The notes under the pieces were generated by a model, which made no database searches, was not told the DNA's origin, and worked only from the letters and a program-made list of their open reading frames with translations. Shown piece by piece: positions 2,783-47,078 of a stretch of DNA of 64,000 bases. The stretch's first letter is position 1, and every line of letters begins with the position of its first letter. Both the position numbers and the translations under genes were made by a program. The stretch is from the IMG/VR virus record IMGVR_UViG_3300043409_000928, positions 221,305 to 285,304 of that record. One strand, written 5' to 3'.

Positions 2783-5700
2783 CTAATTAACCAATAATTT
2801 GGCTATCTCATTGCGATACTTAGCCAGCATGATTCGAGTTTTGTTTGCTTTTTCAACTGCACCAGGTGTAGCGGCTTTATCAAACTTGCTGGAATTGATT
2901 ACTTTGTCTAATTTTTCTGCGTATACACGGGAGATTTTCTGCATAAAGTCTTGACTGTTGGCAATGGAATCCAGTGCTCCTGTGCCAAATAGTTCAGCAG
3001 TTTCAAAGTCTGTGGCCATGGCATGAATTGTTTTGACAATGTCACTCAATCGCTGTTCGTCTTTGAGCCCACCGTGTTGCGCCAAGTTGCCCGGCACAAC
3101 GGGCTTGGTGCCGTGTGCCAATTGATAGTAATAGGAATACATGTCCCCGCCCCAATTGTGCGGATCAATGCTTACTGTGCTCAATTGCGTGTCTTTGCTT
3201 TGACGGAAGCTGACTGGTTGCCCGCCACGTGTCTTAACTTGTACGCCTTGTATGCCAAAGCTCATGTTTAATACTTCAGCAACGCTACTCATTAGGCTGG
3301 TGCTGATAACACCCTTGACACGATATTCTGGTGCTAGTGCTCGTGCCCAATCGGCATGTTCGTTATAGGTGTAAATTAAATCAACCTGTATGGGACCTGC
3401 GCTGGTATCCATGATAACATTGGTACCGTTGCTGGTATTGTATTCAGTGTGGCTGTCTGCAAACGACTTTACAGCATCTGCATACTCACTGGTGCGTCGG
3501 GCGGCACCTACACCCTCTCTGCTGTGAATATAGCACACAACATCTACATCACCGTATTCACGAGTAGGATCTGCTGTTAGGTCACGCTTGTAATAGGTAC
3601 CGGACCCAACAGGCTTGCCCATTCTAATTTCAACATCCAGTTCATTCTCAGCTTGCCAAGCATTAAATTCTCTTTCAAAGTGATCCAGCACATTGATTGC
3701 TTCTTCGATCACATGCGGAGTAATCACAGTATTTTGGGTGGCGGCACTGGCCCAGCCACCTTCTGTGATTGATTCGGTCTTCGGAGCCTGTTGTTCTTTA
3801 TACCATTCCCAAGCTTGATTGTTTATTTCTCTGCCAACTGTTCTTCTATAGTAACCTATAAGGCCCACTAGTTTTTGAGTTTCATCCCATACGGCTGAAG
3901 CGTCTTTACCAAACCACGGCTTGAAATCATCACTCTGCGCCCATTCTTTACAATGCTGTCTAAGTTTACTACCATCTGGATCATATGCTTGCCATGCTCT
4001 ACTGCCGGCCAACTCTACATCCAAGTTATCAAACAGGGTTTGTTCAATCAAGGCAGGTGTAATTACTCCTGATTCTTTTTTGTTGTCGATAGTCCGGAGT
4101 TGTTTGATAACTCTTGGATCTAATACTACACCCTGCGTTGGTTCATTGTAGGCAATCCAACCGTGGCCAGGGTCGAACACACTGGTAAAGCCCAAGTCTC
4201 TAAGCACCTTGTTCCAGCGAACAATATTGGTTTCATCACTCTTGCCTAATCTGCTTAAACAATCGTAGATGAACCAGTATGGTGTACCATCGAATTCATC
4301 TTCTTCAGCTGCCTGTTGCATTATTTCTTCTGAACAATACTGACTTAATGCTTGTTTTAATTTGGCACTATCAACTTGTGTTTCTTTTGTCATTTCACCT
4401 GAACGGTCATATTGAAACAACTGGATGTAGGGCATGTCTTCGCCCCATGGTAGTTTTTTACCACTGCGTGCCATGTCTACCGCATAGCCTAAAGGATAAA
4501 AGTAAATGCCTTTAGGAGTATCTTCACTAATACCTACTTGCGGGTTGATACCTAGCTTGGGTTCTGCTGTCATACTGATAGCCCAATTCTTAATGTCGCC
4601 CAAGGTCTTAGCAACAGCCTGCAACTCTTTCATACCTGACGCTGGCCGTGTATTTTGATCTGGATTAGCTCTTGCTTCTGGCAACTGTGCTGATTCATTT
4701 AGTGCAGAATCTGCAAACCAAGGGTCTATGATTACCAGCTGACCATTCTTTCTTTGCATTACATTTTCTGTATGCAAGTCCCAGCCAAACTTGTTTATCC
4801 TACCTGCCTTGTACAGTATCTGCATAACACCATACAATGTATGAAGCTCTTTGAACTTTGAATTATCATCTGCAAATGTCAAGTCTTGCCAGTACTTGGC
4901 CAGGTTGGCGGCCTGTCTTGGATTGTACTCCGTCCAGGTATCAGCCAACCCCAGTGCATGGTCAACTGCGTCCCAGGATTCATCGCCGGCTACAAAATCA
5001 CTAAAGAACCAGACCACACCTTCATTGAATGAATTTTTCTTGATAGGACTCAATCGTTCCATGTCAATTTGTGTGTACTCTCGGTCCAGTACGCTGATTT
5101 TATTATGTTCATTGATCACTGGCAAGCATTCCAAGTTCTGATGTGCCAGGCAGAATTCATAAAACTTGTTGAATACTTGTTCGGCTTGACTGCCAGGATC
5201 TGGCATTAATATTTTAATAATGTGACCTTTGTTTTTGGCCCACACAGTTGAATCGGCACCTGAGCCTACCTGCTTGTAACCCAATGCTGTAAATTCTTTT
5301 TCAATTTGGTCAGCATGTGCTGTGCCTGTTTCTGCTTCCGCCACACCTTGTGGGTTGCCTAATCTCCTAACAGGAATTTTATATTGTTGTATCAGGCTGT
5401 CAATCTCTGGCGGAATGTCGGCAGGCAATACAATTTCTTTAATTTTCCAATTGTCAACCAACACTTCGTGATGGGTTGACGTATCCATACTTAAAGTGGG
5501 ATCAATTTGCCCTGGTCGGCTAACATATTTTTGTTGTCCTCGTTGTCCTGCAGTCATTTTATATTGATCTGACCCCAAATCTGCACGCCCACCAATTGTA
5601 ATATGACCGTCGAGTACAATACCTACGGTTGGATTAGATCCGCCGCCCCACCTATTTTTTCCTAAAGATTCAGCGTTTGGTGCTAGGTAGGCGCTTAGTT

Positions 5701-8479
5701 CAATCTTGTTATTCACTTTTCCTTGCAAGAATGACTCTAATTGGTTCAATGGAGCCCAGTGTACTTTTAGCATTGCCGCGGCTTTTTTAGCATCCATTTT
5801 TTGTTGAAATAGTTGTTTAAGATATTTTTCAGCACTGTAAGATTTAGTATTCATATCTTTACCAGCATCAAGTGTAGATAATCTTTCATACTCGGCCTTT
5901 TCTTGAGGAGTCATCCAGGCATAATTGTTTAGTTCAGCATCTATTCTTCTTTGAAATTCGGTATTATATAAATTTTTCAATTCTGGATTTGTTTTATATA
6001 ATGCCAAACGATCCTTCATTGGCATTGCTGATATCTGGTCATAGTTGAAACTACCAGTGGTATCTTCCGCCACACCTTGCTTGGGAATCAACAACTCAGG
6101 CATGCGATATTCACTAACATCTACTGGATATGGCTGTAATGATGCTTTGTATGCCTCAGCATACTGTTGTTTTTCCACTGTGGTTTTGGCTCTGTAAAAC
6201 TTGTTGGCAATGGCCATGTCGCCCACCAAAGTTCCCGGTGGAATTGAAATCTTTTTTGGACCGTAGTATTTTAATTTGTCAGAATCTTTGTTGGTCAAAC
6301 TGTAAAAGGTTGATTCCCATTTGTCTGGGTGCAAGGCATATTGTGCAGTTGCTCGTTCTGGAACAAACTGTGCCAGTGTATCTGCACCGGGATGAAATTT
6401 ACCCAACTTGGATAAACTTATAGCAGTATCATTGCTTTCGCCTTCCGTCACACCTTGTTTTATTCTGCTTAATTCATATCTAACTATAGTACCAGTGTCT
6501 GCACGGAGAGGCCTATAGCCCCAAGCACGAGCATAACGAATCACCAGTCTATCATATAACTTGGCACGACTTTCACTGTTTTGGTCAGGCTCCACTTCTT
6601 TGCTGGCAGAGAATGTCAATCGTTTTGGATTGTGTTCTTTAATGTATTGCTGGATGGCGGACAATACTGTGGCAAATACTCGTTGAGCATCACCGTCACC
6701 AGTGACTTCTTGGCTGTTGTTTCTGTGGAACTCTACTTGTATGACTTCTTCACCTTCTTCATCATACTCCATGTTGAACATGATGCTGAGGTTAGAACCA
6801 TCTGGCAAGCGAGCTAGAGCATCCATAGAATCATCAGCTTCGCTCTTTTCCCATGACATGGGATAAGGTTGATCAAAAGCTTCGTCAAGACTTTCAGGAG
6901 TCCAGGCCATATTTTTAGCACCTTTCACTGTGGGTTTAAATCCTTGGCTCTTATAAAACTTGGTCAGCTTGGCCTGACTGACTTGCCCTTTGTCCCAGGG
7001 GAATAATGTCAATGCAATGCCTGCATCTTTGGCCAAGGCCTGCAGTTCTTGCATGGCACGACTGCCCACGCCTTGCCGCAATGGATACGCTTGAATCCAT
7101 TTGACTTCTACTGCGCCTCGTCGACTAAAACTTGGCGTCAGCTCAAACATGGCAAACTGTTGATCGTCACCTGTTCCGCCCAGGGGCATGACATGATTGT
7201 TTTGAAAAGTCTGAGGATATTTTGTATATACTGCGTCAATGAAATCTGTAACTTTAGTATCAGCTTCAGTTAAGTTTTCGTTAGTAGGAACTTCACCCAG
7301 GCCAATTTTACCCGGATACATTGCACCGTCTCGAACTCGTTCGCCGCCATCAAAGTAACGTATTTCAATGGGCATGTCTGGCCAGTTTAATCTGTATGCG
7401 GCCATGATGCGGTGATTGCCTTCGTTGACCCAAGCTTCGCCATTATAGGCCACCATGATATAAGGCAAGTATTCATCATCGGGATTGTTGCCTGGAGGTA
7501 GCTTGCCTGTGCGTTCCATATAGTCCATCAACCATTTCAAGTCATCTCGACGCACATTGGTTTGTTCGTTACGCATGCCTGGCAGTGACGCCAGTCGCAT
7601 TACACGCACTCTAGGCGGAGTACCACGCACACTTGCTGTGGTACTGCCCATGTAAGGCACGCCAAAACTGTTGCGACCCTTGCTCTTGGCATAGTCAATT
7701 TTGTCTTGTAGCCAGTCTTCGTTAGGCACATCTATACTCAGGGTGCCCTCTTCTATCACTGCTTCGTCTACAGGACCACGATCAGCGGCCACTGCACTGG
7801 CAATATCCCACCACTCGCCGGGAAAGTATTCTACTTGTAACATGCTGGCAGGTACTGTGCCGGGAACAATTATCTGTTCATCATCGCGCTCAATGCCGTT
7901 TTTATTTTCTGGGTATGCTCCAAACTTTGCCACCAGGTCAGCCCATTTGACACGGAACATGGTGGCTTGTTCTTTGTCGACATGATAGTAGCCACCTTCG
8001 GGATCGTATGCAAAATACACACCTGGACCAGCATATCCATCTGCACTGGGCAGTAATCCTTTACGCAATACGCTGTCTAGTCCACGGGGCATGTATCCTG
8101 CATGGTACACATACTCACCTGGGCCAGCACTTTCTTCTAACTGTAACACAGGTACAAATGCAGGGATAGTGGACATGCCCAGCTCTAGTGCCTTGGTTGC
8201 ACGGTGATTGCCATCTATAATATAACCTTGACTGTCAGCCACAATGGGGCGAGTAGCAATGTCATGGTCAGTAAGGTCGTCCACATAATCAAAATCAATG
8301 TCCAGCACACGATTATATGGGTCGGTCTTTTCGCCAAATTCATTTAGTTCAAGACTGTCAATGTCAATCTTTTTTAATTCCCATTGTGGAACACTGGCTA
8401 TCACGCTGTCTAATTTAAATCCTTTTTTATGGATCTTTTTAATGTAAGTCAATACTTGTGCGCTGGTAAATGTTTTCAT
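2783..8479 (-). CDS. 1898-aa multi-enzyme polyprotein (ParB-like x2, ART-like, GNAT, kinase-like, nucleotidyltransferase, unknown modules)
   Basis: IIDGNHR and VNEGNHR (ParB-like); YHAG..GLLP..VYF..E (ART-like); RQGVGS..LTKFYKSQGF (GNAT); VGSGADSTVW..IIKI..DLHTENVM..IIDP (kinase); GSG..GDVDV..QVDL (NTase); modules separated by [LIV]xE linkers. Confidence 0.8.
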   Translation of the reverse strand: MKTFTSAQVLTYIKKIHKKGFKLDSVIASVPQWELKKIDIDSLELNEFGEKTDPYNRVLDIDFDYVDDLTDHDIATRPIVADSQGYIIDGNHRATKALELGMSTIPAFVPVLQLEESAGPGEYVYHAGYMPRGLDSVLRKGLLPSADGYAGPGVYFAYDPEGGYYHVDKEQATMFRVKWADLVAKFGAYPENKNGIERDDEQIIVPGTVPASMLQVEYFPGEWWDIASAVAADRGPVDEAVIEEGTLSIDVPNEDWLQDKIDYAKSKGRNSFGVPYMGSTTASVRGTPPRVRVMRLASLPGMRNEQTNVRRDDLKWLMDYMERTGKLPPGNNPDDEYLPYIMVAYNGEAWVNEGNHRIMAAYRLNWPDMPIEIRYFDGGERVRDGAMYPGKIGLGEVPTNENLTEADTKVTDFIDAVYTKYPQTFQNNHVMPLGGTGDDQQFAMFELTPSFSRRGAVEVKWIQAYPLRQGVGSRAMQELQALAKDAGIALTLFPWDKGQVSQAKLTKFYKSQGFKPTVKGAKNMAWTPESLDEAFDQPYPMSWEKSEADDSMDALARLPDGSNLSIMFNMEYDEEGEEVIQVEFHRNNSQEVTGDGDAQRVFATVLSAIQQYIKEHNPKRLTFSASKEVEPDQNSESRAKLYDRLVIRYARAWGYRPLRADTGTIVRYELSRIKQGVTEGESNDTAISLSKLGKFHPGADTLAQFVPERATAQYALHPDKWESTFYSLTNKDSDKLKYYGPKKISIPPGTLVGDMAIANKFYRAKTTVEKQQYAEAYKASLQPYPVDVSEYRMPELLIPKQGVAEDTTGSFNYDQISAMPMKDRLALYKTNPELKNLYNTEFQRRIDAELNNYAWMTPQEKAEYERLSTLDAGKDMNTKSYSAEKYLKQLFQQKMDAKKAAAMLKVHWAPLNQLESFLQGKVNNKIELSAYLAPNAESLGKNRWGGGSNPTVGIVLDGHITIGGRADLGSDQYKMTAGQRGQQKYVSRPGQIDPTLSMDTSTHHEVLVDNWKIKEIVLPADIPPEIDSLIQQYKIPVRRLGNPQGVAEAETGTAHADQIEKEFTALGYKQVGSGADSTVWAKNKGHIIKILMPDPGSQAEQVFNKFYEFCLAHQNLECLPVINEHNKISVLDREYTQIDMERLSPIKKNSFNEGVVWFFSDFVAGDESWDAVDHALGLADTWTEYNPRQAANLAKYWQDLTFADDNSKFKELHTLYGVMQILYKAGRINKFGWDLHTENVMQRKNGQLVIIDPWFADSALNESAQLPEARANPDQNTRPASGMKELQAVAKTLGDIKNWAISMTAEPKLGINPQVGISEDTPKGIYFYPLGYAVDMARSGKKLPWGEDMPYIQLFQYDRSGEMTKETQVDSAKLKQALSQYCSEEIMQQAAEEDEFDGTPYWFIYDCLSRLGKSDETNIVRWNKVLRDLGFTSVFDPGHGWIAYNEPTQGVVLDPRVIKQLRTIDNKKESGVITPALIEQTLFDNLDVELAGSRAWQAYDPDGSKLRQHCKEWAQSDDFKPWFGKDASAVWDETQKLVGLIGYYRRTVGREINNQAWEWYKEQQAPKTESITEGGWASAATQNTVITPHVIEEAINVLDHFEREFNAWQAENELDVEIRMGKPVGSGTYYKRDLTADPTREYGDVDVVCYIHSREGVGAARRTSEYADAVKSFADSHTEYNTSNGTNVIMDTSAGPIQVDLIYTYNEHADWARALAPEYRVKGVISTSLMSSVAEVLNMSFGIQGVQVKTRGGQPVSFRQSKDTQLSTVSIDPHNWGGDMYSYYYQLAHGTKPVVPGNLAQHGGLKDEQRLSDIVKTIHAMATDFETAELFGTGALDSIANSQDFMQKISRVYAEKLDKVINSSKFDKAATPGAVEKANKTRIMLAKYRNEIAKLLVN

Positions 8480-8481
8480 AA

Positions 8482-9327
8482 TTACATTACCAATATTTTG
8501 CCTTCAAGATTGGACATTACATCGTTAAACATAAGTTCCATATCTCCGGACAGCATTTCAGTTGCATGAGTTCTACTGGCATCATCTCTGGCCTCAGGCT
8601 TTAAATTTAGATACTTGGAAGGTGAGCCCCAGGCCTGACGTCCGTAGCCCAAGTTACTGGGCAAGGGATTAAAAGTCACATGGCCTGTACCCAGGTATTG
8701 TGCAAATATTTCGTATAAGAATTCATAGGGTCTGCGAATCTGATTACTGCGACTACTTTTTTGTGTGCCTATAGCATTGAATAGGGCATTGTATTCAGGT
8801 GTCAACTCTGATTTTAAGTTGCCGCCACGCTCACCACTCTTACCATAGTATTCTTCCAGCATGGAATTAACCTGTCCAAAGAAATGATTTTCTGCCGACG
8901 GCCATGCACCTTCTCGATCTATTTTCCCGCCCCTGCGGTGACCTGCTTGCACAGCATGTCCAAACCTATGAGCCATAAGCCAGGGTGTAAGCATTTGCTT
9001 GGCGTCGCCTTTGTTGCCCACATACACTATGGTAATGGCATTTTCATGGCCAGCAACAATTTGCTCACCGTCATCTCCAAAGATGATTTTAACTGTCGCT
9101 GGGTCCATTGGGCCGTATTCACTGTATCGCCCTGTGCCTGAGATGTTGCTGAAAAACAGTCTGATATCGTAAGGAGTATTGGCAAAGAACTTTTCTGCTT
9201 TTAAACGATTCATTGGATGCGGAATCAGCTTTTTATCAGCACCACGAAATGGCCCAGGCTTGTCAAAGTCACCCAATGGCACATAATCTGCCATTGGGAC
9301 TTCGTTAATTAAATCGCGTATTTTCAT
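8482..9327 (-). CDS. Hypothetical protein, putative internal head protein
   Basis: 281-aa ORF; N-term MKIRDLINE|V propeptide-like. Confidence 0.6.
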   Translation of the reverse strand: MKIRDLINEVPMADYVPLGDFDKPGPFRGADKKLIPHPMNRLKAEKFFANTPYDIRLFFSNISGTGRYSEYGPMDPATVKIIFGDDGEQIVAGHENAITIVYVGNKGDAKQMLTPWLMAHRFGHAVQAGHRRGGKIDREGAWPSAENHFFGQVNSMLEEYYGKSGERGGNLKSELTPEYNALFNAIGTQKSSRSNQIRRPYEFLYEIFAQYLGTGHVTFNPLPSNLGYGRQAWGSPSKYLNLKPEARDDASRTHATEMLSGDMELMFNDVMSNLEGKILVM

Positions 9328-9950: not shown

Positions 9951-12272
9951 TTAATGAAACAACAAATAGCTACCGATTACATCGTTGCGATTGGCACTGT
10001 TATCTCCATCGCCTGGCATTACAATGGTATTCCATTTTGGCTTGTCGCCAACAGGAGTCTTCATCATTTCATCATATGTTAAAATACTGTTCTTATCTAT
10101 AGCGTATTTCTGCGCCATAATTGATTTGAATTGGTCAAGATTTTCTGCGCTGGCAAACTGCATACGGCCTTTGGCATCTTTCTTTAAATTGTTACCATCA
10201 CGGGCAATTAGGTCAAAGAACATGTCTTTGGGAACTACCTTGCTGTGCTTGACACGCTGAAAATCAATTTTCTTTTCCTGACTGCTCAATGCGCCACCAG
10301 AGAAATTCATATTAAAGTTCTTTGGTCGTTGTCCTGTGGCAACATCGGCCATTTTAGTATAAGCATAAAAGCCCACGTCTGGGTTGGCCGTGGCCACACC
10401 ATAGGCCATGTCTAGATATTCAGCACTGAAGAAGTCACCTGCATCGTGCCAACGCACCACAACCTTGGCATTCTTTTTGGCCATTTTACTTTTGGCGGCA
10501 GCAATTTCTGCATTTAATTGACTTGCAAAGCCTTGGGGATCGTTCAACAAGAAGTTCAGCATACGAGCCAAGCCCATGCTGACTGCTTTGAACATCACAT
10601 AGCTACCTTTCATTGCGTAGCAGAATGTCTTACATGCGCCAGCACCTGGACAAGTGTCTACCACAACAAACTCTCCGGTCTTTTCATTTACAGCCAGACC
10701 TTTGAGTGCAGGCAAGCCAATGTCAAATATGGCTTCTGTGCCTGTTTCGCTGTGTTGCATCTTGGCATTTTGTCCAAGAATTCGTCCAGGACGAACCATA
10801 ATAGATTTCTTTAATGCTTCAGCGTCAAATGTTTTACCGCCTTCATCTTTGACTTGAATATTGCTACCGTGAATATATGGATAATCAAACTTGTCACGCT
10901 TGGTCTTTGTTTTGTTTTTACTGCGACCCATTAGGTCTTGCATTTCTGCATCTGGAACAGCACGGTAATTGGCACCTAGACCAAAGTCACCTGGCGCTTC
11001 TGCTATATTCTTTTTAATTTCACCGGTATTGGGATTTTCATGATCGCCACGCTTGACACCAGACTTATAAACTTTCTCACCTGTGCTTGGGCTTATATAG
11101 TAATCACCTTTAGAATCTGTACCAATGCTTTTCACTTTGTATTTCTCGCTGCCTTCCGCCACACCTTGGTTGACGCTTTCGTTTTGTCTGACCATTTTCA
11201 TTAGTTTATCATAATATGGTCTTGTTTTATTTTCTATTCGTCTGGCAATCTCTTTATCATTTCTAAATTTACGATCATACTCCCATGCCTGATCTTGTGT
11301 TAAGCCAGCGGCTTTACCAGTTGGATCAATTGGATAATTATTCAATCCTTTAATCTCGTTAATTGAGTCTCTTGCTGTCTTCGTTCCCTTATGATAAGAC
11401 ATTTCTAGGTTATCATTGTCACTGGATGCTACTTCTACTTTTGCTTGAGAATGTAAGTCAAACATTTCATTACTCCACTTTGACATTTCCGTGTTTGAAT
11501 TTAACATTAATCCAGATATCATATTATAAACATATCCAAGTAAAAAATACGCCTGTGTATTACTTGGCATTTGTAATTTAGAAGTTTTTTCTTTTTTGCC
11601 AATCTCGTAACCAACACCACCACCAGCCGCACCTGCCACAGCCGCCGCACCCAAGCCTTTTAAGAATCCTCTACGGTCTATTTCATCAATTTGACTTTCA
11701 TTTAAGTCACCAAATGGCAAGTACCAAAACCAATTTTCAAAGCCACCTGGATTGGTATCGTAGTCCTGGTGTGCGCTGTTACGGGCACTCATCATCATAC
11801 GCTTGAATTCACTCACAGCGCCATTCTTTTCAGCCACTGCTTCTAGTGCATCATATAATTGGCCAGCTTTAAAACTATCTCTATGCTTTTCAATTCCCGG
11901 TGCCAGCTCATCATACACATCAGCAAATTGCAAATGTAAGTCGCTCATTACACCTTCTTTGACTGTGTCTTCTACTGTGCCTACATAATTGTGATCGTGT
12001 ACTTGATAGCCTTGCTTCTTGTACCATTTGACGGCTGTGTCACAGGCCTGTTCGCGACCGTCTGCTGTGACAGAACACATTCTTTGTCGAGTTTCACCAC
12101 GCTGACTAACAGCAGTATGGTTAGGATCGCTTACTGTAACAGCAACCTTGTGTTTTTGGCGGCCTTCTACTGCTTCTTCGACTTCTTTTTCATCATCTTT
12201 AACAAAAGCATCCAAGCTCATTACAGTAAGTCCGTGTAGTTTGCCTACACCAGCCACTTCGAATATTTTCAT
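9951..12272 (-). CDS. 773-aa polyprotein with internal twin-arginine motif and C-terminal GP88-like (radical-SAM-like) domain
   Basis: MKIFEV N-term; linkers AVE|G, VKE|G, IDE|I, QGVAE|G, IAE|A; RRGFLKGLGAAAVAG; CPGAGACKTFCYA and RWHDAGDFFS. Confidence 0.7.
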   Translation of the reverse strand: MKIFEVAGVGKLHGLTVMSLDAFVKDDEKEVEEAVEGRQKHKVAVTVSDPNHTAVSQRGETRQRMCSVTADGREQACDTAVKWYKKQGYQVHDHNYVGTVEDTVKEGVMSDLHLQFADVYDELAPGIEKHRDSFKAGQLYDALEAVAEKNGAVSEFKRMMMSARNSAHQDYDTNPGGFENWFWYLPFGDLNESQIDEIDRRGFLKGLGAAAVAGAAGGGVGYEIGKKEKTSKLQMPSNTQAYFLLGYVYNMISGLMLNSNTEMSKWSNEMFDLHSQAKVEVASSDNDNLEMSYHKGTKTARDSINEIKGLNNYPIDPTGKAAGLTQDQAWEYDRKFRNDKEIARRIENKTRPYYDKLMKMVRQNESVNQGVAEGSEKYKVKSIGTDSKGDYYISPSTGEKVYKSGVKRGDHENPNTGEIKKNIAEAPGDFGLGANYRAVPDAEMQDLMGRSKNKTKTKRDKFDYPYIHGSNIQVKDEGGKTFDAEALKKSIMVRPGRILGQNAKMQHSETGTEAIFDIGLPALKGLAVNEKTGEFVVVDTCPGAGACKTFCYAMKGSYVMFKAVSMGLARMLNFLLNDPQGFASQLNAEIAAAKSKMAKKNAKVVVRWHDAGDFFSAEYLDMAYGVATANPDVGFYAYTKMADVATGQRPKNFNMNFSGGALSSQEKKIDFQRVKHSKVVPKDMFFDLIARDGNNLKKDAKGRMQFASAENLDQFKSIMAQKYAIDKNSILTYDEMMKTPVGDKPKWNTIVMPGDGDNSANRNDVIGSYLLFH

Positions 12273-12330
12273 AATATTAATCCTAAATTAATTGCCAAAC
12301 AAAGGCTTCAGGATATTTAGTCATAATTAA

Positions 12331-12357
12331 AAGCCCACTGGTATTAGCAGTGGGCTT
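12331..12357 (-). terminator. Intrinsic terminator hairpin
   Basis: AAGCCCACTG-CTAATAC-CAGTGGGCTT, 10-bp stem, downstream of 12376 gene and upstream of a TAAATA motif. Confidence 0.7.
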
Positions 12358-12375
12358 ATTTCAATGAATATTAAA

Positions 12376-12573
12376 TCATTTTCCGTTTATTGCACGGAGA
12401 CGCTCGACCTTTTCATGCTGGTCACGACAGTCGGGACTGCAAAATGACCACTCAGTGGGTTCTTCGCATGTAAGGCAAAAGCCTGTGCGAATAGGTTTAA
12501 ATTGTTTGGCAACTGCACGGCGTAATTCTTCCGCGGCTTCCATTGCTTCTTGTGCGTCATCTACTATATCTGC
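12376..12573 (-). CDS. TraR/DksA-like or DUF2116-like Zn-finger protein
   Basis: MADIVDDAQE acidic N-term; CLTC...FCSPDC; SD AAGGAAG supports start at 12573. Confidence 0.55.
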   Translation of the reverse strand, partial: ADIVDDAQEAMEAAEELRRAVAKQFKPIRTGFCLTCEEPTEWSFCSPDCRDQHEKVERLRAINGK

Positions 12574-12608
12574 CATTGTACTTCCTTTGATCAATAATGT
12601 AATTATGC

Positions 12609-12974
12609 CTAGTCGGCCTTAGAGTCAGGCTTTTCACCTGCTAATTTTTTAAGCATGGCACGGGCCCGAACATCATCTTCTTTTCTGGCTCGTTTAACAT
12701 CATCGCTCAACTTCAAATGACTATCATATTCTCTGGCCCATTCTACACCAGCTAGCCAGTGTTCAAGTCCTTCAATACTGCCCACAAACAACTCAGCGTC
12801 ACGACTGTAAATTGGTAGAGCCATGGCATCAATGGGCACCAGGCTTAGTGCGCCATGATCGTCAGTGAAACTACTGTGCCTTGATTGATTGAATTTAAAA
12901 CCAATTTTGGTAATTCGTTTCTCAAGCCTGCGAATGCGTTCAATTGTGTTCCAACCTGCCATTATACTCTCCAA
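12609..12974 (-). CDS. Hypothetical phage protein
   Basis: 121-aa ORF in co-directional run. Confidence 0.6.
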   Translation of the reverse strand: MESIMAGWNTIERIRRLEKRITKIGFKFNQSRHSSFTDDHGALSLVPIDAMALPIYSRDAELFVGSIEGLEHWLAGVEWAREYDSHLKLSDDVKRARKEDDVRARAMLKKLAGEKPDSKAD

Positions 12975-34719: not shown

Positions 34720-36933
34720 TTAACTAATTTTTAATTCAGTACCATCGCTTGAAACATGGTGTGTATTCAACTCTTCTTTGATGATGCGTTTGGCAATAGG
34801 CAAACGAATTTGTTCATTTATTAATCTCTTCATTGGACGAGCACCCATTGTATCACTATAACCATGTACTGCCAAATAGTCCAATGCACTATCGTCATAT
34901 TCAATACTTTGCTTTTGTTCCGCAAGTTGAGCACGAATTTGTTGCATAAACTTGTCAGCAACACGTCGAATTACTTCCTTGTCTAATCGATTAAACTTAA
35001 CAGTTGCGTCTAAGCGATTGCGGAATTCTGGACTAAAGAACTTCTTAACTGCTTCTTCGTTTGCATCGTTATTCAATGCGCTACCAAAACCAATTACATT
35101 CCGTTCGCTGTCTACTGCACCCAAGTTGCTGGTCATAATAACAAACGCATTGCGGGCACTGGCCTGTTTATTATCACTGCCGGTAATAATACCATTATCC
35201 ATTAAGCCCAGCAAGACCTGGATCACATCTGGGTGAGCTTTTTCAATTTCGTCAAACAGCAATACACAGTTGGGCACACGCTCAAGTTCATTGATAAGCT
35301 TACCAGAGCCAGCTTTGCCTTCGCCGTATCCAACATAGCCTGGCGGACTACCAATCAAGCTGGCAATTTTGTGCGGTTCACGATATTCGCTCATATCAAA
35401 TCGTACAAGTTCCATTCCCAGTCCCAATGCCAATTGTTGGGCAAGTTCTGTTTTACCAGTACCAGTTGGGCCTACAAACAAGAAGTTGGCCATTGGGCGA
35501 TTCACTTCTTTCAATCCTGACTTGGCAATATACACCATGTTCATCAAGCGTTCAATTGCATTGTCTTGACCAAACACATTTGTACGCATACGGCTTTCTA
35601 ATTCTGTGACTGCAACGCCTTTTTGCTCACCCAGTTGTTCCAAAGGAACACGAGTCAAGTCGCTAATTTCTCTGCGAACATGTTCTGCTGTCAGCATTGT
35701 ACCTGCTTCAGTATTTGTGACACGGAGATAAGACATAGCAGAATCGATAATATCAATTGCCTTATCTGGAAGCTTGCGATCTAACATGTACTTCATTGAC
35801 AAGTCAATTGCCAAGTCAATGGTTTCCTCATTGATATCAAGTTTATGGTATTTGGCATACAATGGAGCAATTCGACGCAACATCAATTTGGTTTCTTCAA
35901 CTGTGGGTTCGTTAATGTCAATCTTAGTGAAGCGGCGCAGTAGGGCACGGTCTTTCTCAAAGTGTTCGCGGAACTCTTCGTAGGTGGTACTGCCAACGCA
36001 ACGTAGCTTGCCTTTTTCCAAGCTGGGCTTGAGCATGTTTGCTACATCCATACTGCCTTGGCCACCTGCGCCCGCACCCATGATCATATGAATTTCATCA
36101 ATGAATAAAATTGCATCTTCACGATCTTCAAGAGCTTCCAACACCTGTTGCATACGTTCTTCAAAGTCTCCTCTGTATCGTGTACCAGCCAGTAACTTGC
36201 CAAGGTCTAAACTGTAAATTGTTTTCTTTTTAAGTACTTCCGGGACTTCACCTTTGATGATGGCAACAGCAAGACCTTCTACAATGGCAGTCTTACCAAC
36301 GCCTGGTTCGCCAACCATGATAGCATTGTTTTTCTTCTTGCGAGTAAGTGTCTGTGCAAGACGAAACACTTCTTTTTCTCTGCCAATTAACGGATCAATT
36401 AACGCACTTTCTGCACTCTTATTCAAGTTAGTTGTATACTTGCTAAGAATCTTTTCTCCGCCACGCTGTTTGGCCACTTTGCTTTCTTTACTACGACCAT
36501 CTTTTAGACGACCAATATAGTTAATCAATATTTCTTTTGTAATGCCATTCTTTGCTAAGAAAAAATTGGCATGGCTATTTTTTTCGCTGGAGATGCTGAT
36601 CAGCAGATCCAATGGTTCCATATGACCACGACCTGTAAAGATGGCCTGCGTATAAGCACGATTGAAACAACGCTCTAAGGTTGCAGTTTTGCGTGGCTTG
36701 GTAATACCTTCAACGCGAATGTCTTCTTGCTCTCTTAACCATAGGTCAATGTCATCTTTAAGAGAGTTTACATCAACCTCTAATTCTGTCAAGGCATCTT
36801 TGATTTCATCCTCGTCCAGCATGACTCTAAGTATATGCTCAAGGGTTACATATTCGTGTTCCCTGTTAAGGGCTTCCTGAAATGCCTTGGCAATGACTTC
36901 GTTAATGCGATTGTTGTTTTCTTCTTGACTCAT
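34720..36933 (-). CDS. clpA: ATP-dependent Clp protease ATP-binding subunit ClpA
   Basis: HEYVTLEH N-domain, two Walker A (GEPGVGKT, GPTGTGKTE), FDMSEY, GSPPGYVG. Confidence 0.95.
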   Translation of the reverse strand: MSQEENNNRINEVIAKAFQEALNREHEYVTLEHILRVMLDEDEIKDALTELEVDVNSLKDDIDLWLREQEDIRVEGITKPRKTATLERCFNRAYTQAIFTGRGHMEPLDLLISISSEKNSHANFFLAKNGITKEILINYIGRLKDGRSKESKVAKQRGGEKILSKYTTNLNKSAESALIDPLIGREKEVFRLAQTLTRKKKNNAIMVGEPGVGKTAIVEGLAVAIIKGEVPEVLKKKTIYSLDLGKLLAGTRYRGDFEERMQQVLEALEDREDAILFIDEIHMIMGAGAGGQGSMDVANMLKPSLEKGKLRCVGSTTYEEFREHFEKDRALLRRFTKIDINEPTVEETKLMLRRIAPLYAKYHKLDINEETIDLAIDLSMKYMLDRKLPDKAIDIIDSAMSYLRVTNTEAGTMLTAEHVRREISDLTRVPLEQLGEQKGVAVTELESRMRTNVFGQDNAIERLMNMVYIAKSGLKEVNRPMANFLFVGPTGTGKTELAQQLALGLGMELVRFDMSEYREPHKIASLIGSPPGYVGYGEGKAGSGKLINELERVPNCVLLFDEIEKAHPDVIQVLLGLMDNGIITGSDNKQASARNAFVIMTSNLGAVDSERNVIGFGSALNNDANEEAVKKFFSPEFRNRLDATVKFNRLDKEVIRRVADKFMQQIRAQLAEQKQSIEYDDSALDYLAVHGYSDTMGARPMKRLINEQIRLPIAKRIIKEELNTHHVSSDGTELKIS

Positions 36934-45941: not shown

Positions 45942-47078
45942 TCAAACAAGTGCTTTTAGCCTATCAATAAAACTTAGATAGTATGGTGGTAAGGACTGCA
46001 CCTTGGCCAGTTGATTGTATTTTGTGATCCAATCTAACAAATTTTGAATCCTAATTTTGTCTGGTGGGTGAGACGTTGTAATTTGCGGCTTGATAAATTC
46101 TTCAAATTTGATGAAATAAGTTTTCCAGTGATGATCAAGTGAACTTGGCCAATTTGGTAGGAACTGATGTATGCTGTTACCAAAATTTGCAACACTGAAC
46201 ATCTGGGGTTGATTGACCATGTTAATTTTTAGTTTTACTTTAGCCAATAATCCTTCTTGATCCAACCAATGCAATATATTGATATGGTTTTCTATGTTCA
46301 ACATGCTTATACTGATAGATATAGTTACATCGGCATTTTTTGCAACCATTGCTTTTAGATTAGAACCAAATCTTTCAAAATTCAATCCGCCTCGAATAAA
46401 TTCACCTTCTTCACCAATGGCATCTAAACTGAATATTAAATTTATTACAAGCGGCGTATTAGCCTTAAGTCTGTCAATGTTTGATTCAAATTTGGTCTTG
46501 AAGTTACCTGAATAATTGCCATTGGTTATTACGCGGAGAGTAATTGCATTTGTCAATCCAATTGTTAGCATTGAATCAACAATTTTATTGAATGCTGGAT
46601 CAACACTAGGTTCGCCGCCATGTAGGTTGATATGATGTAGTGTATTTTGATGTTGTAAGATGAACGCCGAAAGTTTCCCCCAACTCACATCAAATAAATC
46701 TTCCTTGAAGGGATACTTGTTTGTCATTGATTGCCATACCGTACTTGAATATTCGCTACAAATGATGCAATGCATATTGCAGGTATCACCAAAGTCAATA
46801 TCAACTATGCCAGGTGGCTTTGGTTTTGTACGTAACATTTCAATAGTTGTTACACCCCCGTCAGTTAAGCGAAATGAAGTGCCGCCCATGGCTTCTTCTC
46901 TCCAACAAGAGCTACATGCTAGATGTTTTTTATTTTCTAGGAACGATTTCTTTACATCTTCAACTCGAACAATATTTGTTTCATATTTATTATATGTTGT
47001 TTTGCAACAGAACTTCCAGTCGTCAGTCCTAAGTCTAACAAATGTTTCTTCCCACGGATATAAACATGAATGATCCAT
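45942..47078 (-). CDS. Radical SAM protein with N-terminal twitch/SPASM-like cysteines
   Basis: CNMHCIIC (CxxxCxxC), GGEPS, TNG; extra C..P W, CC, CSSCW. Confidence 0.85.
   Translation of the reverse strand: MDHSCLYPWEETFVRLRTDDWKFCCKTTYNKYETNIVRVEDVKKSFLENKKHLACSSCWREEAMGGTSFRLTDGGVTTIEMLRTKPKPPGIVDIDFGDTCNMHCIICSEYSSTVWQSMTNKYPFKEDLFDVSWGKLSAFILQHQNTLHHINLHGGEPSVDPAFNKIVDSMLTIGLTNAITLRVITNGNYSGNFKTKFESNIDRLKANTPLVINLIFSLDAIGEEGEFIRGGLNFERFGSNLKAMVAKNADVTISISISMLNIENHINILHWLDQEGLLAKVKLKINMVNQPQMFSVANFGNSIHQFLPNWPSSLDHHWKTYFIKFEEFIKPQITTSHPPDKIRIQNLLDWITKYNQLAKVQSLPPYYLSFIDRLKALV

What the first reader, a model, noticed from the sequence alone, without database searches (positions are those of the whole stretch)
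11600..11700. Cryptic twin-arginine signal peptide unmasked by cleavage inside a polyprotein
Seen: at aa ~197-222 of the 773-aa protein, LNE|SQIDE|IDRRGFLKGLGAAAVAGAAGGG. This is a textbook Tat motif (S/T-R-R-x-F-L-K plus h-region) sitting immediately after a putative protease site. Known: Tat signals function near N-termini. Inference: head maturation would create a new N-terminus so the ejected fragment (aa ~198-373) could be exported or membrane-targeted by host Tat, e.g. for superinfection exclusion or envelope remodelling.
Basis: partly seen in the sequence, partly recalled or inferred. Interest (0 to 1): 0.72.

Follow-up and report, generated by a model that had tools for sequence, protein, structure and literature searches.

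The report
Tat export signal inside phage polyprotein
A freshwater jumbo phage carries a genuine bacterial twin-arginine (Tat) export signal in the middle of a modular polyprotein, right after two sites matching its head protease's cutting rule. Relatives do the same with Tat, Sec and lipoprotein signals, which points to an undescribed way of sending cut-out phage protein modules into the host envelope.

Summary
Residues 198-222 of the 773-aa ORF (window 9951-12272, minus strand) form a Tat-type signal. It scores at the Pfam TAT_signal cut-off and above the TIGR01409 cut-off, and it is the only such site in a long ORF of the 285-kb genome.

It is not a chance match.
- The ORF is a mosaic of modules that are shuffled among hundreds of proteins of related freshwater T4-superfamily jumbo phages.
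- The module breakpoints fall on [L/I/V]-x-E sites, the cleavage rule of the T4 gp21 protease. The genome encodes a gp21-type head protease.
- The same Tat cassette recurs inside relatives. In 40 of 43 loci fetched without specifying the upstream sequence, a Phi-x-E site lies 2-4 residues before RR. Half of 46 contexts have an AxA signal-peptidase site about 22 residues after RR.
- Stand-alone homologues of the cargo module carry the same signal at their true N-terminus.
- Relatives also embed Sec-type and lipobox signals directly after Phi-x-E|G.

Cleavage, virion packaging and Tat-dependent export are all inferred, not shown. This copy lacks an AxA site, so it is probably a signal anchor. 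The synonymous sites of the cassette are also conserved, so part of the recurrence reflects spread as DNA. I found no prior description. Interest is high.

The parts
9951..12272 (-). 773-aa modular polyprotein ORF (P0001)
   Evidence: BLAST against 120 relatives shows it is a mosaic of at least six modules.
12174..12272 (-). N-terminal leader, aa 1-33 (MKIFEVAG...), ending in V-E-E33
   Evidence: About 40 relatives share it even though their downstream modules differ. Alignments end at q34 in 26 proteins. It fits the family-wide N-terminal tag M-x-[ILA]-x-[DE]-[LIFV]-[FIL]. A role as a capsid-targeting-like leader is inferred only.
11955..12173 (-). Module B, aa 34-106, ending in V-K-E106|G
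   Evidence: Alignment breakpoints cluster at q101-104. It has a weak relative in a Synechococcus phage.
11697..11954 (-). Module C, aa 107-192: helical module ending ...NWFWYLPF
   Evidence: More than 50 otherwise unrelated multi-module proteins share it at 55-75% identity. It is always followed by an acidic Phi-x-E linker.
11682..11705 (-). Tandem Phi-x-E sites L190-N-E192 | S-Q-I195-D-E197 |, the predicted protease sites
   Evidence: Phi at -5 and E at -3 from RR in 43 of 46 contexts, and a second Phi-x-E five residues upstream in 23 of 46. The pattern matches the T4 gp21 rule L/I-X-E (PMC9026906).
11607..11681 (-). Tat-type signal, aa 198-222 (IDRRGFLKG + Ala/Gly hydrophobic region), with no AxA site
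   Evidence: PF10518 at its cut-off. TIGR01409 above its cut-off. AlphaFold2 models it as an isolated low-confidence helix that does not pack on the domain. Stand-alone homologues have the same signal at their N-terminus.
11154..11606 (-). Cargo of module D, aa 223-373: helical bundle of unknown function, ending ...ESVNQGVAE373
   Evidence: AlphaFold2 pLDDT is about 90 for aa 235-370. No fold match in PDB or AFDB. Homologues are aligned in A2.
11151..11168 (-). Linker Q-G-V-A-E373|G, a family-wide junction motif
   Evidence: A six-frame scan of the genome finds this motif class only 5 times, all in three long ORFs. The Logan assembly breaks here, and depth spikes at window 11105-11211. The motif uses the rare Ala codon GCG.
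10998..11153 (-). Module E, aa 374-425, ending I-A-E425|A
   Evidence: It is shared with P0007, P0016 and P0077. Breakpoints lie at q415-425.
9954..10997 (-). GP88 module, aa 426-773: conserved enzyme-like alpha/beta domain with an invariant C-x5-C-x3-C cluster
   Evidence: PF17338 at 1.5e-33. Identity is 57-97% across about 60 relatives that have varied N-terminal modules. The AlphaFold2 model gives only weak TIM-barrel-like matches.
2783..8479 (-). Neighbouring 1898-aa polyprotein with three QGV[AT]E linkers (motif starts at window 6457, 6079, 5350)
   Evidence: It contains ParB-like and kinase-like modules, an architecture like that of polyvalent proteins.
8482..9327 (-). 281-aa ORF that carries the family N-terminal tag (MKIRDLINE...)
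   Evidence: PHROGs gives it no function.

Best explanation
The motif is a genuine Tat-type export-signal cassette at a module junction of a phage polyprotein.

Shown:
- The ORF is a concatenation of swappable modules joined by short acidic linkers, each ending in [L/I/V]-x-E.
- The Tat cassette starts two residues after the second of two such sites.
- The same cassette heads many different cargo modules inside relatives' polyproteins.
- The same cassette sits at the true N-terminus of stand-alone homologues of this cargo.
- The genome encodes a T4 gp21-type head maturation protease.

Inferred:
1. A Glu-specific phage protease cuts the polyprotein at the linkers. The most likely candidate is the head protease, acting on polyprotein taken into the prohead through the conserved N-terminal leader.
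2. The cut after E197 leaves I198-D-R-R-G-F-L-K as a new N-terminus, which is the normal geometry of a Tat signal.
3. The released fragment of about 176 residues (aa 198-373) folds into its helical bundle and is taken by the host Tat system. This happens either in the next infected cell after ejection with the DNA, or in the producing cell if processing is cytoplasmic.
4. This copy lacks an AxA signal-peptidase site, so the signal most likely stays as an N-in/C-out membrane anchor that holds the bundle on the periplasmic face of the inner membrane.
5. The function of the cargo is unknown.
For: - Two curated Tat models match the motif.
- Six of the 11 Phi-x-E sites in the protein (E33, E106, E192, E197, E373, E425) sit at module breakpoints defined independently from BLAST alignment ends. 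My rough estimate is under one by chance.
- Phi-x-E lies just before RR in 43 of 46 contexts and in 40 of 43 loci. P3 is hydrophobic, P1 is Glu and P2 is free, as in the gp21 rule (PMC9026906).
- A Peptidase_S77 head protease and a gp23-type capsid protein are present.
- AxA or VxA follows at about +22 from RR, often with Lys at -2, in 23 of 46 contexts.
- In one relative the cargo after the Tat signal is a TonB C-terminal domain, which is periplasmic.
- Stand-alone homologues of 130-185 aa begin MKTLREYIDQLDE-ISRRDFLKG.
- Relatives carry Sec-type signals (E|GWKS...AQA|A) and lipobox signals (E|GVKSS...LSGC) right after Phi-x-E. P0083 has a Tat signal and a lipobox signal in one ORF.
- The GP88 module and a common C-terminal module occur both downstream of export signals and in proteins without any. 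That is only coherent if the modules are separated.
- The hydrophobic-region positions the search pattern left free (12-19 after RR) stay small or hydrophobic while varying.
- AlphaFold2 shows a confident bundle with a detached signal helix.
Against: - There is no proteomic, expression or export evidence.
- The cassette and the QGVAE linker are conserved at synonymous sites against genome codon usage. GCG is 8% of Ala codons genome-wide but dominates in the cassette. Recurrence therefore partly reflects spread of a DNA cassette, and the contexts are not independent samples.
- An N-terminal copy (P0131) still keeps L-Q-E-I-D before RR, so Phi-x-E-ID may simply be part of the signal's n-region.
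- P1' = Ile or Val differs from the usual small residue at T4 gp21 sites (from memory, not checked).
- This copy lacks AxA.
- The gene's position and upstream region give no clue to late expression.
- The TatC docking job gave no answer.
- The host, and so its Tat system, is unknown.
Confidence: 0.5

Rival explanations
1. The signals work internally without prior unmasking. The polyprotein is targeted as a whole, and the Tat, Sec or lipobox segment inserts as a loop or signal anchor. Host signal peptidases cut on the periplasmic side where AxA or a lipobox is present, and the upstream modules stay in the cytoplasm. This is how flavivirus-type polyproteins use internal signals in the ER. The phage protease may cut afterwards or not at all.
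For: Internal Tat signals work in dual Sec-Tat membrane proteins (PMC3471235, PMC5449189). AxA and lipobox sites after the signals show that host peptidases are expected to act. The positive residues lie on the N-terminal side, as an N-in anchor needs.
Against: Known internal Tat signals follow Sec-inserted transmembrane helices, not a soluble region of about 200 residues, and no hydrophobic segment lies upstream here. Everything downstream, including GP88, would then be exported in some phages but not in most. P0083 would carry a second export signal inside an already exported chain. This reading also does not explain why Phi-x-E sites sit immediately before every signal.
Confidence: 0.17
2. 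Unmasking happens by cleavage but outside the capsid. The polyprotein is cut in the cytoplasm of the producing cell, by the head protease outside proheads or by another phage or host Glu-specific protease. The modules are exported in that same cell, for example for lysis control, envelope remodelling or exclusion of other phages. Nothing is ejected.
For: Stand-alone homologues look like ordinary Tat substrates made and exported in the infected cell. The gene lies among non-structural genes. The same genome encodes envelope proteins, a curli-like CsgG/CsgF operon, nearby.
Against: T4-type head proteases are active inside proheads (PMC9026906, PMC5694885). No other candidate protease was identified in the locus. 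The conserved N-terminal tag shared by otherwise unrelated polyproteins is best explained as a targeting leader like the T4 capsid-targeting sequence (PMC8442874).
Confidence: 0.2
3. The cassette is a recombination joint or relic. The conserved linker and Tat DNA segments mainly provide in-frame homology for module shuffling, and in this ORF the Tat-like segment is a passenger with no export role.
For: Synonymous sites are conserved against codon bias (GTG GCG GAA GGC; CGT AGA GGA TTC TTA AAA). Assembly-graph breaks and depth spikes fall exactly at the linker and the Tat segment. One relative has a truncated scar, RRGFLKGL followed directly by AEGSLEE (P0014). Swaps occur exactly at Phi-x-E|.
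Against: The Tat features are kept through sequence variation: hydrophobic regions free of charge, and AxA at +22 to +26 in several different sequence versions. Sec-type and lipobox signals occupy the same position with unrelated sequences. N-terminal stand-alone versions exist. The AlphaFold2 model places the segment outside the fold, like a signal.
Confidence: 0.1
4. The motif is an artefact: a chimeric metagenome assembly, or two genes read as one.
For: The conserved cassettes are repeats that can tangle assemblies. The Logan contigs break at the QGVAE linker.
Against: A Logan contig spans the Tat junction without a difference, and depth is equal on both sides of the linker, 14.7 against 16.1. 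The same architecture types are seen in ENA, JGI, NCBI and Logan assemblies. There is no stop codon and no in-frame start with a ribosome-binding site near the motif.
Confidence: 0.03

Closest known systems
Bacterial twin-arginine (Tat) signal peptides (Pfam PF10518, TIGR01409)
   Same: It has the consensus core (D/S)-R-R-x-F-L-K-G and a weakly hydrophobic Ala/Gly region. In many relatives it also has a c-region with Lys and AxA about 22 residues after RR. Both curated models match it.
   Different: It sits 197 residues inside an ORF, and up to about 990 residues inside in relatives, after soluble modules. This copy has no AxA site. It is carried by a virus as a shuffled cassette.
T4 internal proteins and Alt, and the ejection proteins of phiKZ and SPN3US (capsid-targeting sequence plus prohead-protease processing)
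   Same: The phage has a T4-type capsid protein and head protease. The predicted sites end in Glu with a hydrophobic P3. A conserved N-terminal leader is shared by otherwise unrelated cargo. Tandem redundant sites occur, as in phiKZ propeptides (PMC9026906, PMC5694885, PMC8442874).
   Different: Here many cargo modules are chained in one ORF and would be diced apart. Some cargo starts with a host export signal, which has not been reported for T4 or phiKZ-type head proteins. Presence in the virion is untested.
Polyvalent proteins of phages and conjugative elements (Iyer et al. 2017, PMC5512222)
   Same: They are large multi-domain phage proteins that combine unrelated effector domains (ParB-like and kinase-like in the 1898-aa neighbour). 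That paper also points out that domains with different subcellular targets need processing.
   Different: No zincin-like metallopeptidase module was seen. Instead there are stereotyped Phi-x-E linkers. That paper does not mention signal peptides or twin-arginine motifs at all.
Dual Sec-Tat membrane proteins with internal Tat signals (actinobacterial Rieske and others; PMC3471235, PMC5449189)
   Same: A Tat motif acts away from the N-terminus of the polypeptide.
   Different: Those signals follow Sec-inserted transmembrane helices and precede cofactor domains. Here the upstream part is soluble and bounded by protease-type sites.
Polyproteins of eukaryotic RNA viruses with internal signal peptides, such as the flavivirus C-prM junction (from general knowledge, not checked here)
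   Same: The layout is a viral-protease site on the cytoplasmic side of an internal signal and a host signal-peptidase site on the far side.
   Different: This is a bacterial dsDNA phage. It uses Tat, Sec and lipoprotein pathways, targeting is likely post-translational, and processing may take place inside the capsid.

Membership tests
Tat signal peptide | Twin-arginine consensus (S/T/D)-R-R-x-F-L-K | tested here: met
   The sequence is D-R-R-G-F-L-K at aa 199-205. PF10518 scores 22.7 bits, equal to its cut-off. TIGR01409 scores 19.6-21.8 bits against a cut-off of 16.7.
Tat signal peptide | Moderately hydrophobic, uncharged region of 12-20 residues after the motif | tested here: met
   LGAAAVAGAAGGGV has a mean Kyte-Doolittle value of 1.5 and no charged residue.
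Tat signal peptide | c-region with an AxA signal-peptidase site | tested here: not met
   This copy has no AxA after the hydrophobic region (GVGYEIGKKEK). The site is present in 23 of 46 relatives' cassettes. Uncleaved Tat signal anchors are known, so this argues for anchoring rather than against Tat.
Tat signal peptide | Located at the N-terminus of the translated protein | tested here: not met
   RR is at aa 200-201 of 773, with no internal start codon. The feature is met in stand-alone homologues, where RR is at 16-17.
Tat signal peptide | Export depends on TatABC and on the RR pair | not testable with these tools
   This needs a reporter assay. The complex prediction with E. coli TatC and TatB gave no answer.
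T4-type prohead-protease substrate / internal head protein | The genome encodes a gp21-family (Peptidase_S77) head protease | tested here: met
   G000:C1:113522-114163 scores 89.9 bits with PF03420 and 2.2e-57 with phrog_207. It lies between the portal and scaffold/capsid genes.
T4-type prohead-protease substrate / internal head protein | Cleavage motif L/I-X-E at the processed junctions | tested here: met
   E33, E106, E192, E197, E373 and E425 all follow L, I or V at P3 and coincide with module breakpoints. The pattern holds family-wide. Cleavage itself is not shown.
T4-type prohead-protease substrate / internal head protein | N-terminal capsid-targeting propeptide | tested here: inconclusive
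   A conserved N-terminal tag is shared by most polyproteins. Stand-alone proteins start MKTLREYIDQLDE, which resembles the T4 sequence MKTYQEFIAE (PMC8442874). This is resemblance only.
T4-type prohead-protease substrate / internal head protein | Protein present in mature virions in processed form | not testable with these tools
   There is no isolate and no proteome. No cultured phage has these modules.
Polyvalent proteins (Iyer et al. 2017) | Several unrelated effector domains in one polypeptide of a phage or conjugative element | tested here: met
   This ORF has at least six modules. Relatives fuse ribosome-modulation-factor, sigma-70, cytidylyltransferase and TonB_C domains. The neighbour has ParB-like and kinase-like domains.
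Polyvalent proteins (Iyer et al. 2017) | Signature domains such as zincin-like MPTase, DdrB-like ParB or virion RNA polymerase | tested here: inconclusive
   The 773-aa ORF has none. The 1898-aa neighbour has a ParB-like hit at E 1.2e-4. No MPTase was detected, but no dedicated profile was available.
Dual Sec-Tat membrane proteins | Sec-inserted transmembrane helices upstream of the internal Tat signal | tested here: not met
   No hydrophobic segment lies in aa 1-197.

The most novel reading that the evidence does not exclude
A large clade of freshwater T4-superfamily jumbo phages packs multi-effector polyproteins into the head. The head protease dices them at Phi-x-E linkers and so unmasks Tat, Sec and lipoprotein signals. 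The virion-borne modules are ejected into the next host's cytoplasm and are then re-exported by the host's own machinery into its inner membrane, periplasm or outer membrane at the very start of infection. This would be an 'inject, then export' route for phage effectors that has not been described.
Probability: 0.3. Interest if true: 0.9.

Novelty: new variant of a known kind. Interest (0 to 1): 0.8.

Why it matters
Signal peptides are taken to work at N-termini, and phage head proteins processed by the prohead protease are thought of as cytoplasmic effectors or structural parts. Here all three classes of bacterial export signal sit inside viral polyproteins, exactly at protease-type junctions. 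This holds across hundreds of environmental phage proteins.

If cleavage unmasks them, phages can address separate pieces of one gene product to different cell compartments. They might even deliver ready-made envelope effectors with the virion.

The finding gives concrete predictions: neo-N-termini at defined residues, and RR- and tatC-dependent targeting. It also offers a natural set of cleavable linkers and signals for phage engineering. Finally, it shows in-frame cassettes that drive domain shuffling in huge phages.

Tried and rejected
- Internal translation start: rejected. No ATG or GTG, and no TTG with a ribosome-binding site, lies before the motif.
- Assembly chimera at the Tat junction: rejected.
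- Paralogues of the modules, or further Tat sites, in the same genome: none found.
- Cultured-phage relatives: tblastn found only distant GP88 hits and one Synechococcus phage hit.
I replaced it with a degenerate DNA pattern.
- Function of the cargo: the ESM Atlas, PDB and AFDB fold searches gave nothing above noise.
- GP88 fold: only weak TIM-barrel-like matches.
- T4 late promoter TATAAATA upstream of the polyprotein or head genes: absent, so expression timing cannot be read from the sequence.
- TatC/TatB docking of the peptide: no answer, so not used as evidence.
- Literature: four searches found no paper linking Tat or other signal peptides with phage polyproteins. The polyvalent-protein paper does not mention signal peptides.
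Full report
**What is there**

The window is the last 64 kb of a 285,304-bp IMG/VR virus record, estimated 86% complete. The ORF at window 9951-12272 on the minus strand encodes 773 residues. Residues 186-224 contain L-N-E, S-Q-I-D-E, then I-D-R-R-G-F-L-K-G and an Ala/Gly-rich stretch. The Arg-Arg codons are at window 11670-11675.

- Pfam TAT_signal matches aa 197-217 at exactly its gathering score, 22.7 bits.
- TIGR01409 scores above its cut-off, 19.6 to 21.8 bits against 16.7.
- The C-terminal third is a GP88 domain (PF17338, 1.5e-33).
- A six-frame scan of the whole genome finds no other RRxF[LIVM][KRQ] site in a long ORF.
- A Logan contig assembled independently covers window 11120-12700 with no differences where it overlaps the window.

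**The phage**

The genome encodes a T4 gp23-type major capsid protein (323 bits) and a Peptidase_S77 (gp21-type) head maturation protease (89.9 bits; phrog_207 at 2.2e-57). Both sit in a T4-like order of portal, small proteins, protease, scaffold and capsid. The capsid protein is 62-64% identical to those of PA5oct, GAP32, CBB and Phosso. This is an uncultured member of the T4-superfamily jumbo phages. Runs that hold its DNA are freshwater and lake metagenomes. A curli-like CsgG/CsgF operon with ordinary N-terminal signals lies just left of the window, which points to a diderm host.

**The ORF is a polyprotein-like mosaic**

A search of 5.8 billion proteins gave 260 relatives. BLAST mapping shows that they share different pieces of the query:
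- aa 1-34, in dozens of proteins;
- aa ~100-194, in more than 50 proteins that are otherwise unrelated, some with ribosome-modulation-factor, sigma-70 or cytidylyltransferase domains;
- aa 192-377;
- aa 369-425;
- aa ~420-773 (GP88), at 57-97% identity behind many different N-terminal parts.

Alignment ends pile up at q34, q101-104, q189-194, q365-377 and q415-425. The protein has only 11 [L/I/V]-x-E sites, and six of them (E33, E106, E192, E197, E373, E425) fall in those narrow zones.

Everything that follows module C in relatives starts after a short acidic linker ending in Phi-x-E, such as ELSEE, DVAEG, QGVAEA or QLEE. The linker class QGV[AT]E occurs only five times in all six frames of the genome. 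All five are in three long ORFs: this one, the 1898-aa neighbour (window 2783-8479) and an 874-aa ORF.

The nearest relatives are 94% identical in the flanks but carry other modules where this ORF has the Tat module. The 874-aa ORF and its relative P0140 diverge exactly after ...N-M-I-D-E. P0140 continues with a Tat cargo and this genome with something else.

**The Tat cassette recurs, is internal, and sits after Phi-x-E**

Among 148 relatives I found 46 distinct contexts of RRxF[LIVM][KRQ]G, at positions 17 to 982.
- Position -5 is L, I or V in 43 of 46, position -3 is E in 43 of 46, and position -4 is variable. This is the L/I-X-E rule reported for T4 gp21 (PMC9026906).
- A second Phi-x-E lies five residues further upstream in 23 of 46. 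Redundant sites of this kind are also noted for phiKZ propeptides (PMC9026906).

Those proteins were partly retrieved through words that include the linker. I therefore scanned IMG/VR with a degenerate DNA pattern for RRGFLKGxGAAA only. All 43 loci belong to this family. Forty have Phi-x-E 2-4 residues before RR, and in 36 the RR lies more than 40 codons after the first ATG of the open frame.

Downstream, 23 of 46 contexts have [A/V/S]-x-A followed by a polar residue. Most are at +22 from RR and often have Lys at -2 (AKA|D, AMA|Q, ANA|D). That is a normal Tat c-region with a signal peptidase I site. Ten of ten tested relatives hit TAT_signal near its cut-off. In one of them the cargo is a TonB C-terminal domain, a periplasmic module.

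**Stand-alone versions**

An exhaustive phmmer search with aa 192-377 found proteins of 130-185 residues. Their match starts at residue ~10, and they begin MKTLREYIDQLDE-ISRRDFLKG. Their ORFs cannot extend upstream, and they lie in T4-like contexts. The cargo of this cassette is therefore, in other phages, an ordinary small protein with an N-terminal Tat signal. Their first ten residues resemble the T4 capsid-targeting sequence MKTYQEFIAE (PMC8442874). About 70% of complete polyprotein N-termini share a tag M-x-[ILA]-x-[DE]-[LIFV]-[FIL]. This is a resemblance, not a test.

**Other export signals in the same position**

Relatives carry three kinds of internal signal directly after Phi-x-E:
- Sec-type signals, for example E|GWKS, a hydrophobic stretch, then AHA|A;
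- a similar signal ending VRA|D;
- lipoprotein signals, E|GVKSS, a hydrophobic stretch, then L-S-G-C.

P0083 has a Tat signal at residue 633 and a lipobox signal ending at C958 in one ORF. GP88 and a common C-terminal module occur both downstream of such signals and, more often, in proteins without any. These facts are hard to reconcile with export of an uncut chain. They are the strongest argument that the modules are separated.

**Structure**

AlphaFold2 on an alignment of 20 module D sequences gives a confident helical bundle for aa ~235-370, with pLDDT about 90. The Tat segment is a detached helix with pLDDT below 50. No fold relative was found, so the cargo's function is unknown. This copy and its closest module D relatives have AAGY-x-x-G-[KQ] instead of AxA. 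I therefore expect an uncleaved signal anchor here.

**Caveats**

- The cassette and the linker are conserved at synonymous sites against the genome's codon usage. GCG is 8% of Ala codons, GGA 15% of Gly and TTC 29% of Phe genome-wide, yet the cassette reads CGT AGA GGA TTC TTA AAA GGC ... GCG GCG and the linker reads GTG GCG GAA GGC.
- Depth spikes and contig breaks fall on exactly these segments. One lake contig joins the same Tat signal and the same linker around a different 720-nt cargo.
- The cassettes therefore spread as DNA and probably serve as in-frame crossover points. The many contexts are not independent, and P0014 shows a truncated scar.
- An N-terminal copy keeps L-Q-E-I-D, so the acidic site could be part of the n-region.
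- Against a pure relic reading, the hydrophobic-region positions the pattern left free (12-19 after RR) vary but stay uncharged. The AxA sites come in several sequence versions, and unrelated Sec and lipobox signals occupy the same slot.

**Mechanism and what is known**

My best reading is this. A Glu-specific phage protease, most likely the gp21-type head protease acting in the prohead, dices the polyprotein. The cut after E197 makes the Tat signal N-terminal. The host Tat system then inserts the aa 198-373 module, probably anchored in the inner membrane.

The rivals are:
- internal signal function without prior cleavage, with precedents in dual Sec-Tat proteins (PMC3471235, PMC5449189);
- cytoplasmic processing in the producing cell without ejection;
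- a recombination joint with no export role.

None of the steps (cleavage, packaging, export) is shown. Neither the polyvalent-protein paper (PMC5512222) nor four literature searches mention export signals inside phage polyproteins. I rate it a new variant of known kinds (Tat signals, head-protease substrates, polyvalent proteins) and of high interest.

Noticed in passing
window 2783-8479 (-): The 1898-aa neighbour is a second polyprotein. It has two ParB-like segments, a kinase-like module and three QGV[AT]E linkers (motif starts at window 6457, 6079, 5350). Its architecture looks like that of polyvalent proteins.
   Followed up: partly
G000:C1:206537-209161 (-), outside the window: This is a third polyprotein of 874 aa that starts MKFFQEIQ. 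It shares ...DDVDYENMIDE with relative P0140 and then diverges exactly after the Glu. P0140 continues with a Tat cargo and this genome does not.
   Followed up: partly
L053 (G000:C1:219034-222522), just left of the window; also L005:21513-22598: The phage carries a curli-like operon: a CsgG-like lipoprotein (PF03783, 148 bits), a CsgF-like protein, and a 251-aa secreted protein with GNTN-type repeats. All three have ordinary N-terminal signals, and the operon lies downstream of the polyprotein locus on the same strand.
   Followed up: partly
relatives P0016 aa 30-60, P0033 aa 110-142, P0074 aa 165-200, P0083 aa 930-960, P0089 aa 895-930: Internal Sec-type signals (AxA) and lipoprotein signals (lipobox LSGC) start right after Phi-x-E|G in relatives' polyproteins. 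P0083 combines a Tat signal and a lipobox signal in one ORF.
   Followed up: partly
N-termini of P0001-P0180; window 8482-9327 (-); G000:C1:115020-115226 (-): About 70% of complete relatives start with M-x-[ILA]-x-[DE]-[LIFV]-[FIL]. The 281-aa ORF next door (MKIRDLINE) shares the tag. So does a 68-aa ORF between the portal and protease genes (MRFNDIINAEEEIEKE). It may be a capsid-targeting tag.
   Followed up: partly
window 11105-11211 and 11640-11746: Lake metagenome contigs pile up (depth up to about 350x) and break exactly at the QGVAE linker and at the Tat segment. One contig joins these two around a different 720-nt cargo. The cassettes are conserved at synonymous sites against codon bias, so they behave as in-frame recombination joints.
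   Followed up: partly
window 9954-10997 (-): The GP88 module has an invariant C-x5-C-x3-C cluster and many invariant residues across relatives. The AlphaFold2 model gives only weak TIM-barrel-like matches, with a radical-SAM protein far down the list. Its function is unknown.
   Followed up: partly
P0014 aa 41-60: This is a truncated Tat cassette. RRGFLKGL runs directly into an AEGSLEE linker with no hydrophobic region, apparently a recombination scar.
   Followed up: no
stand-alone homologues P0151, P0153, P0157, P0158, P0168: Small Tat-signal proteins end in a conserved tail (ASPDAVKRIEQL-like) that follows an acidic Phi-x-E-type linker. Even these look like leader-cargo-tail mini-polyproteins.
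   Followed up: no
window ~12330-12365 (-): A G+C-rich hairpin followed by a T run lies about 60 nt upstream of the ORF start and looks like an intrinsic terminator of the preceding gene. The T4 late-promoter motif TATAAATA is not used upstream of head genes in this genome.
   Followed up: partly
window 34720-36933 (-), 45942-47078 (-): There is a ClpA-like two-AAA ATPase of 737 aa, 40-44% identical to those of Atu_ph07, Phosso and PA5oct. There is also a radical-SAM protein in the window.
   Followed up: no
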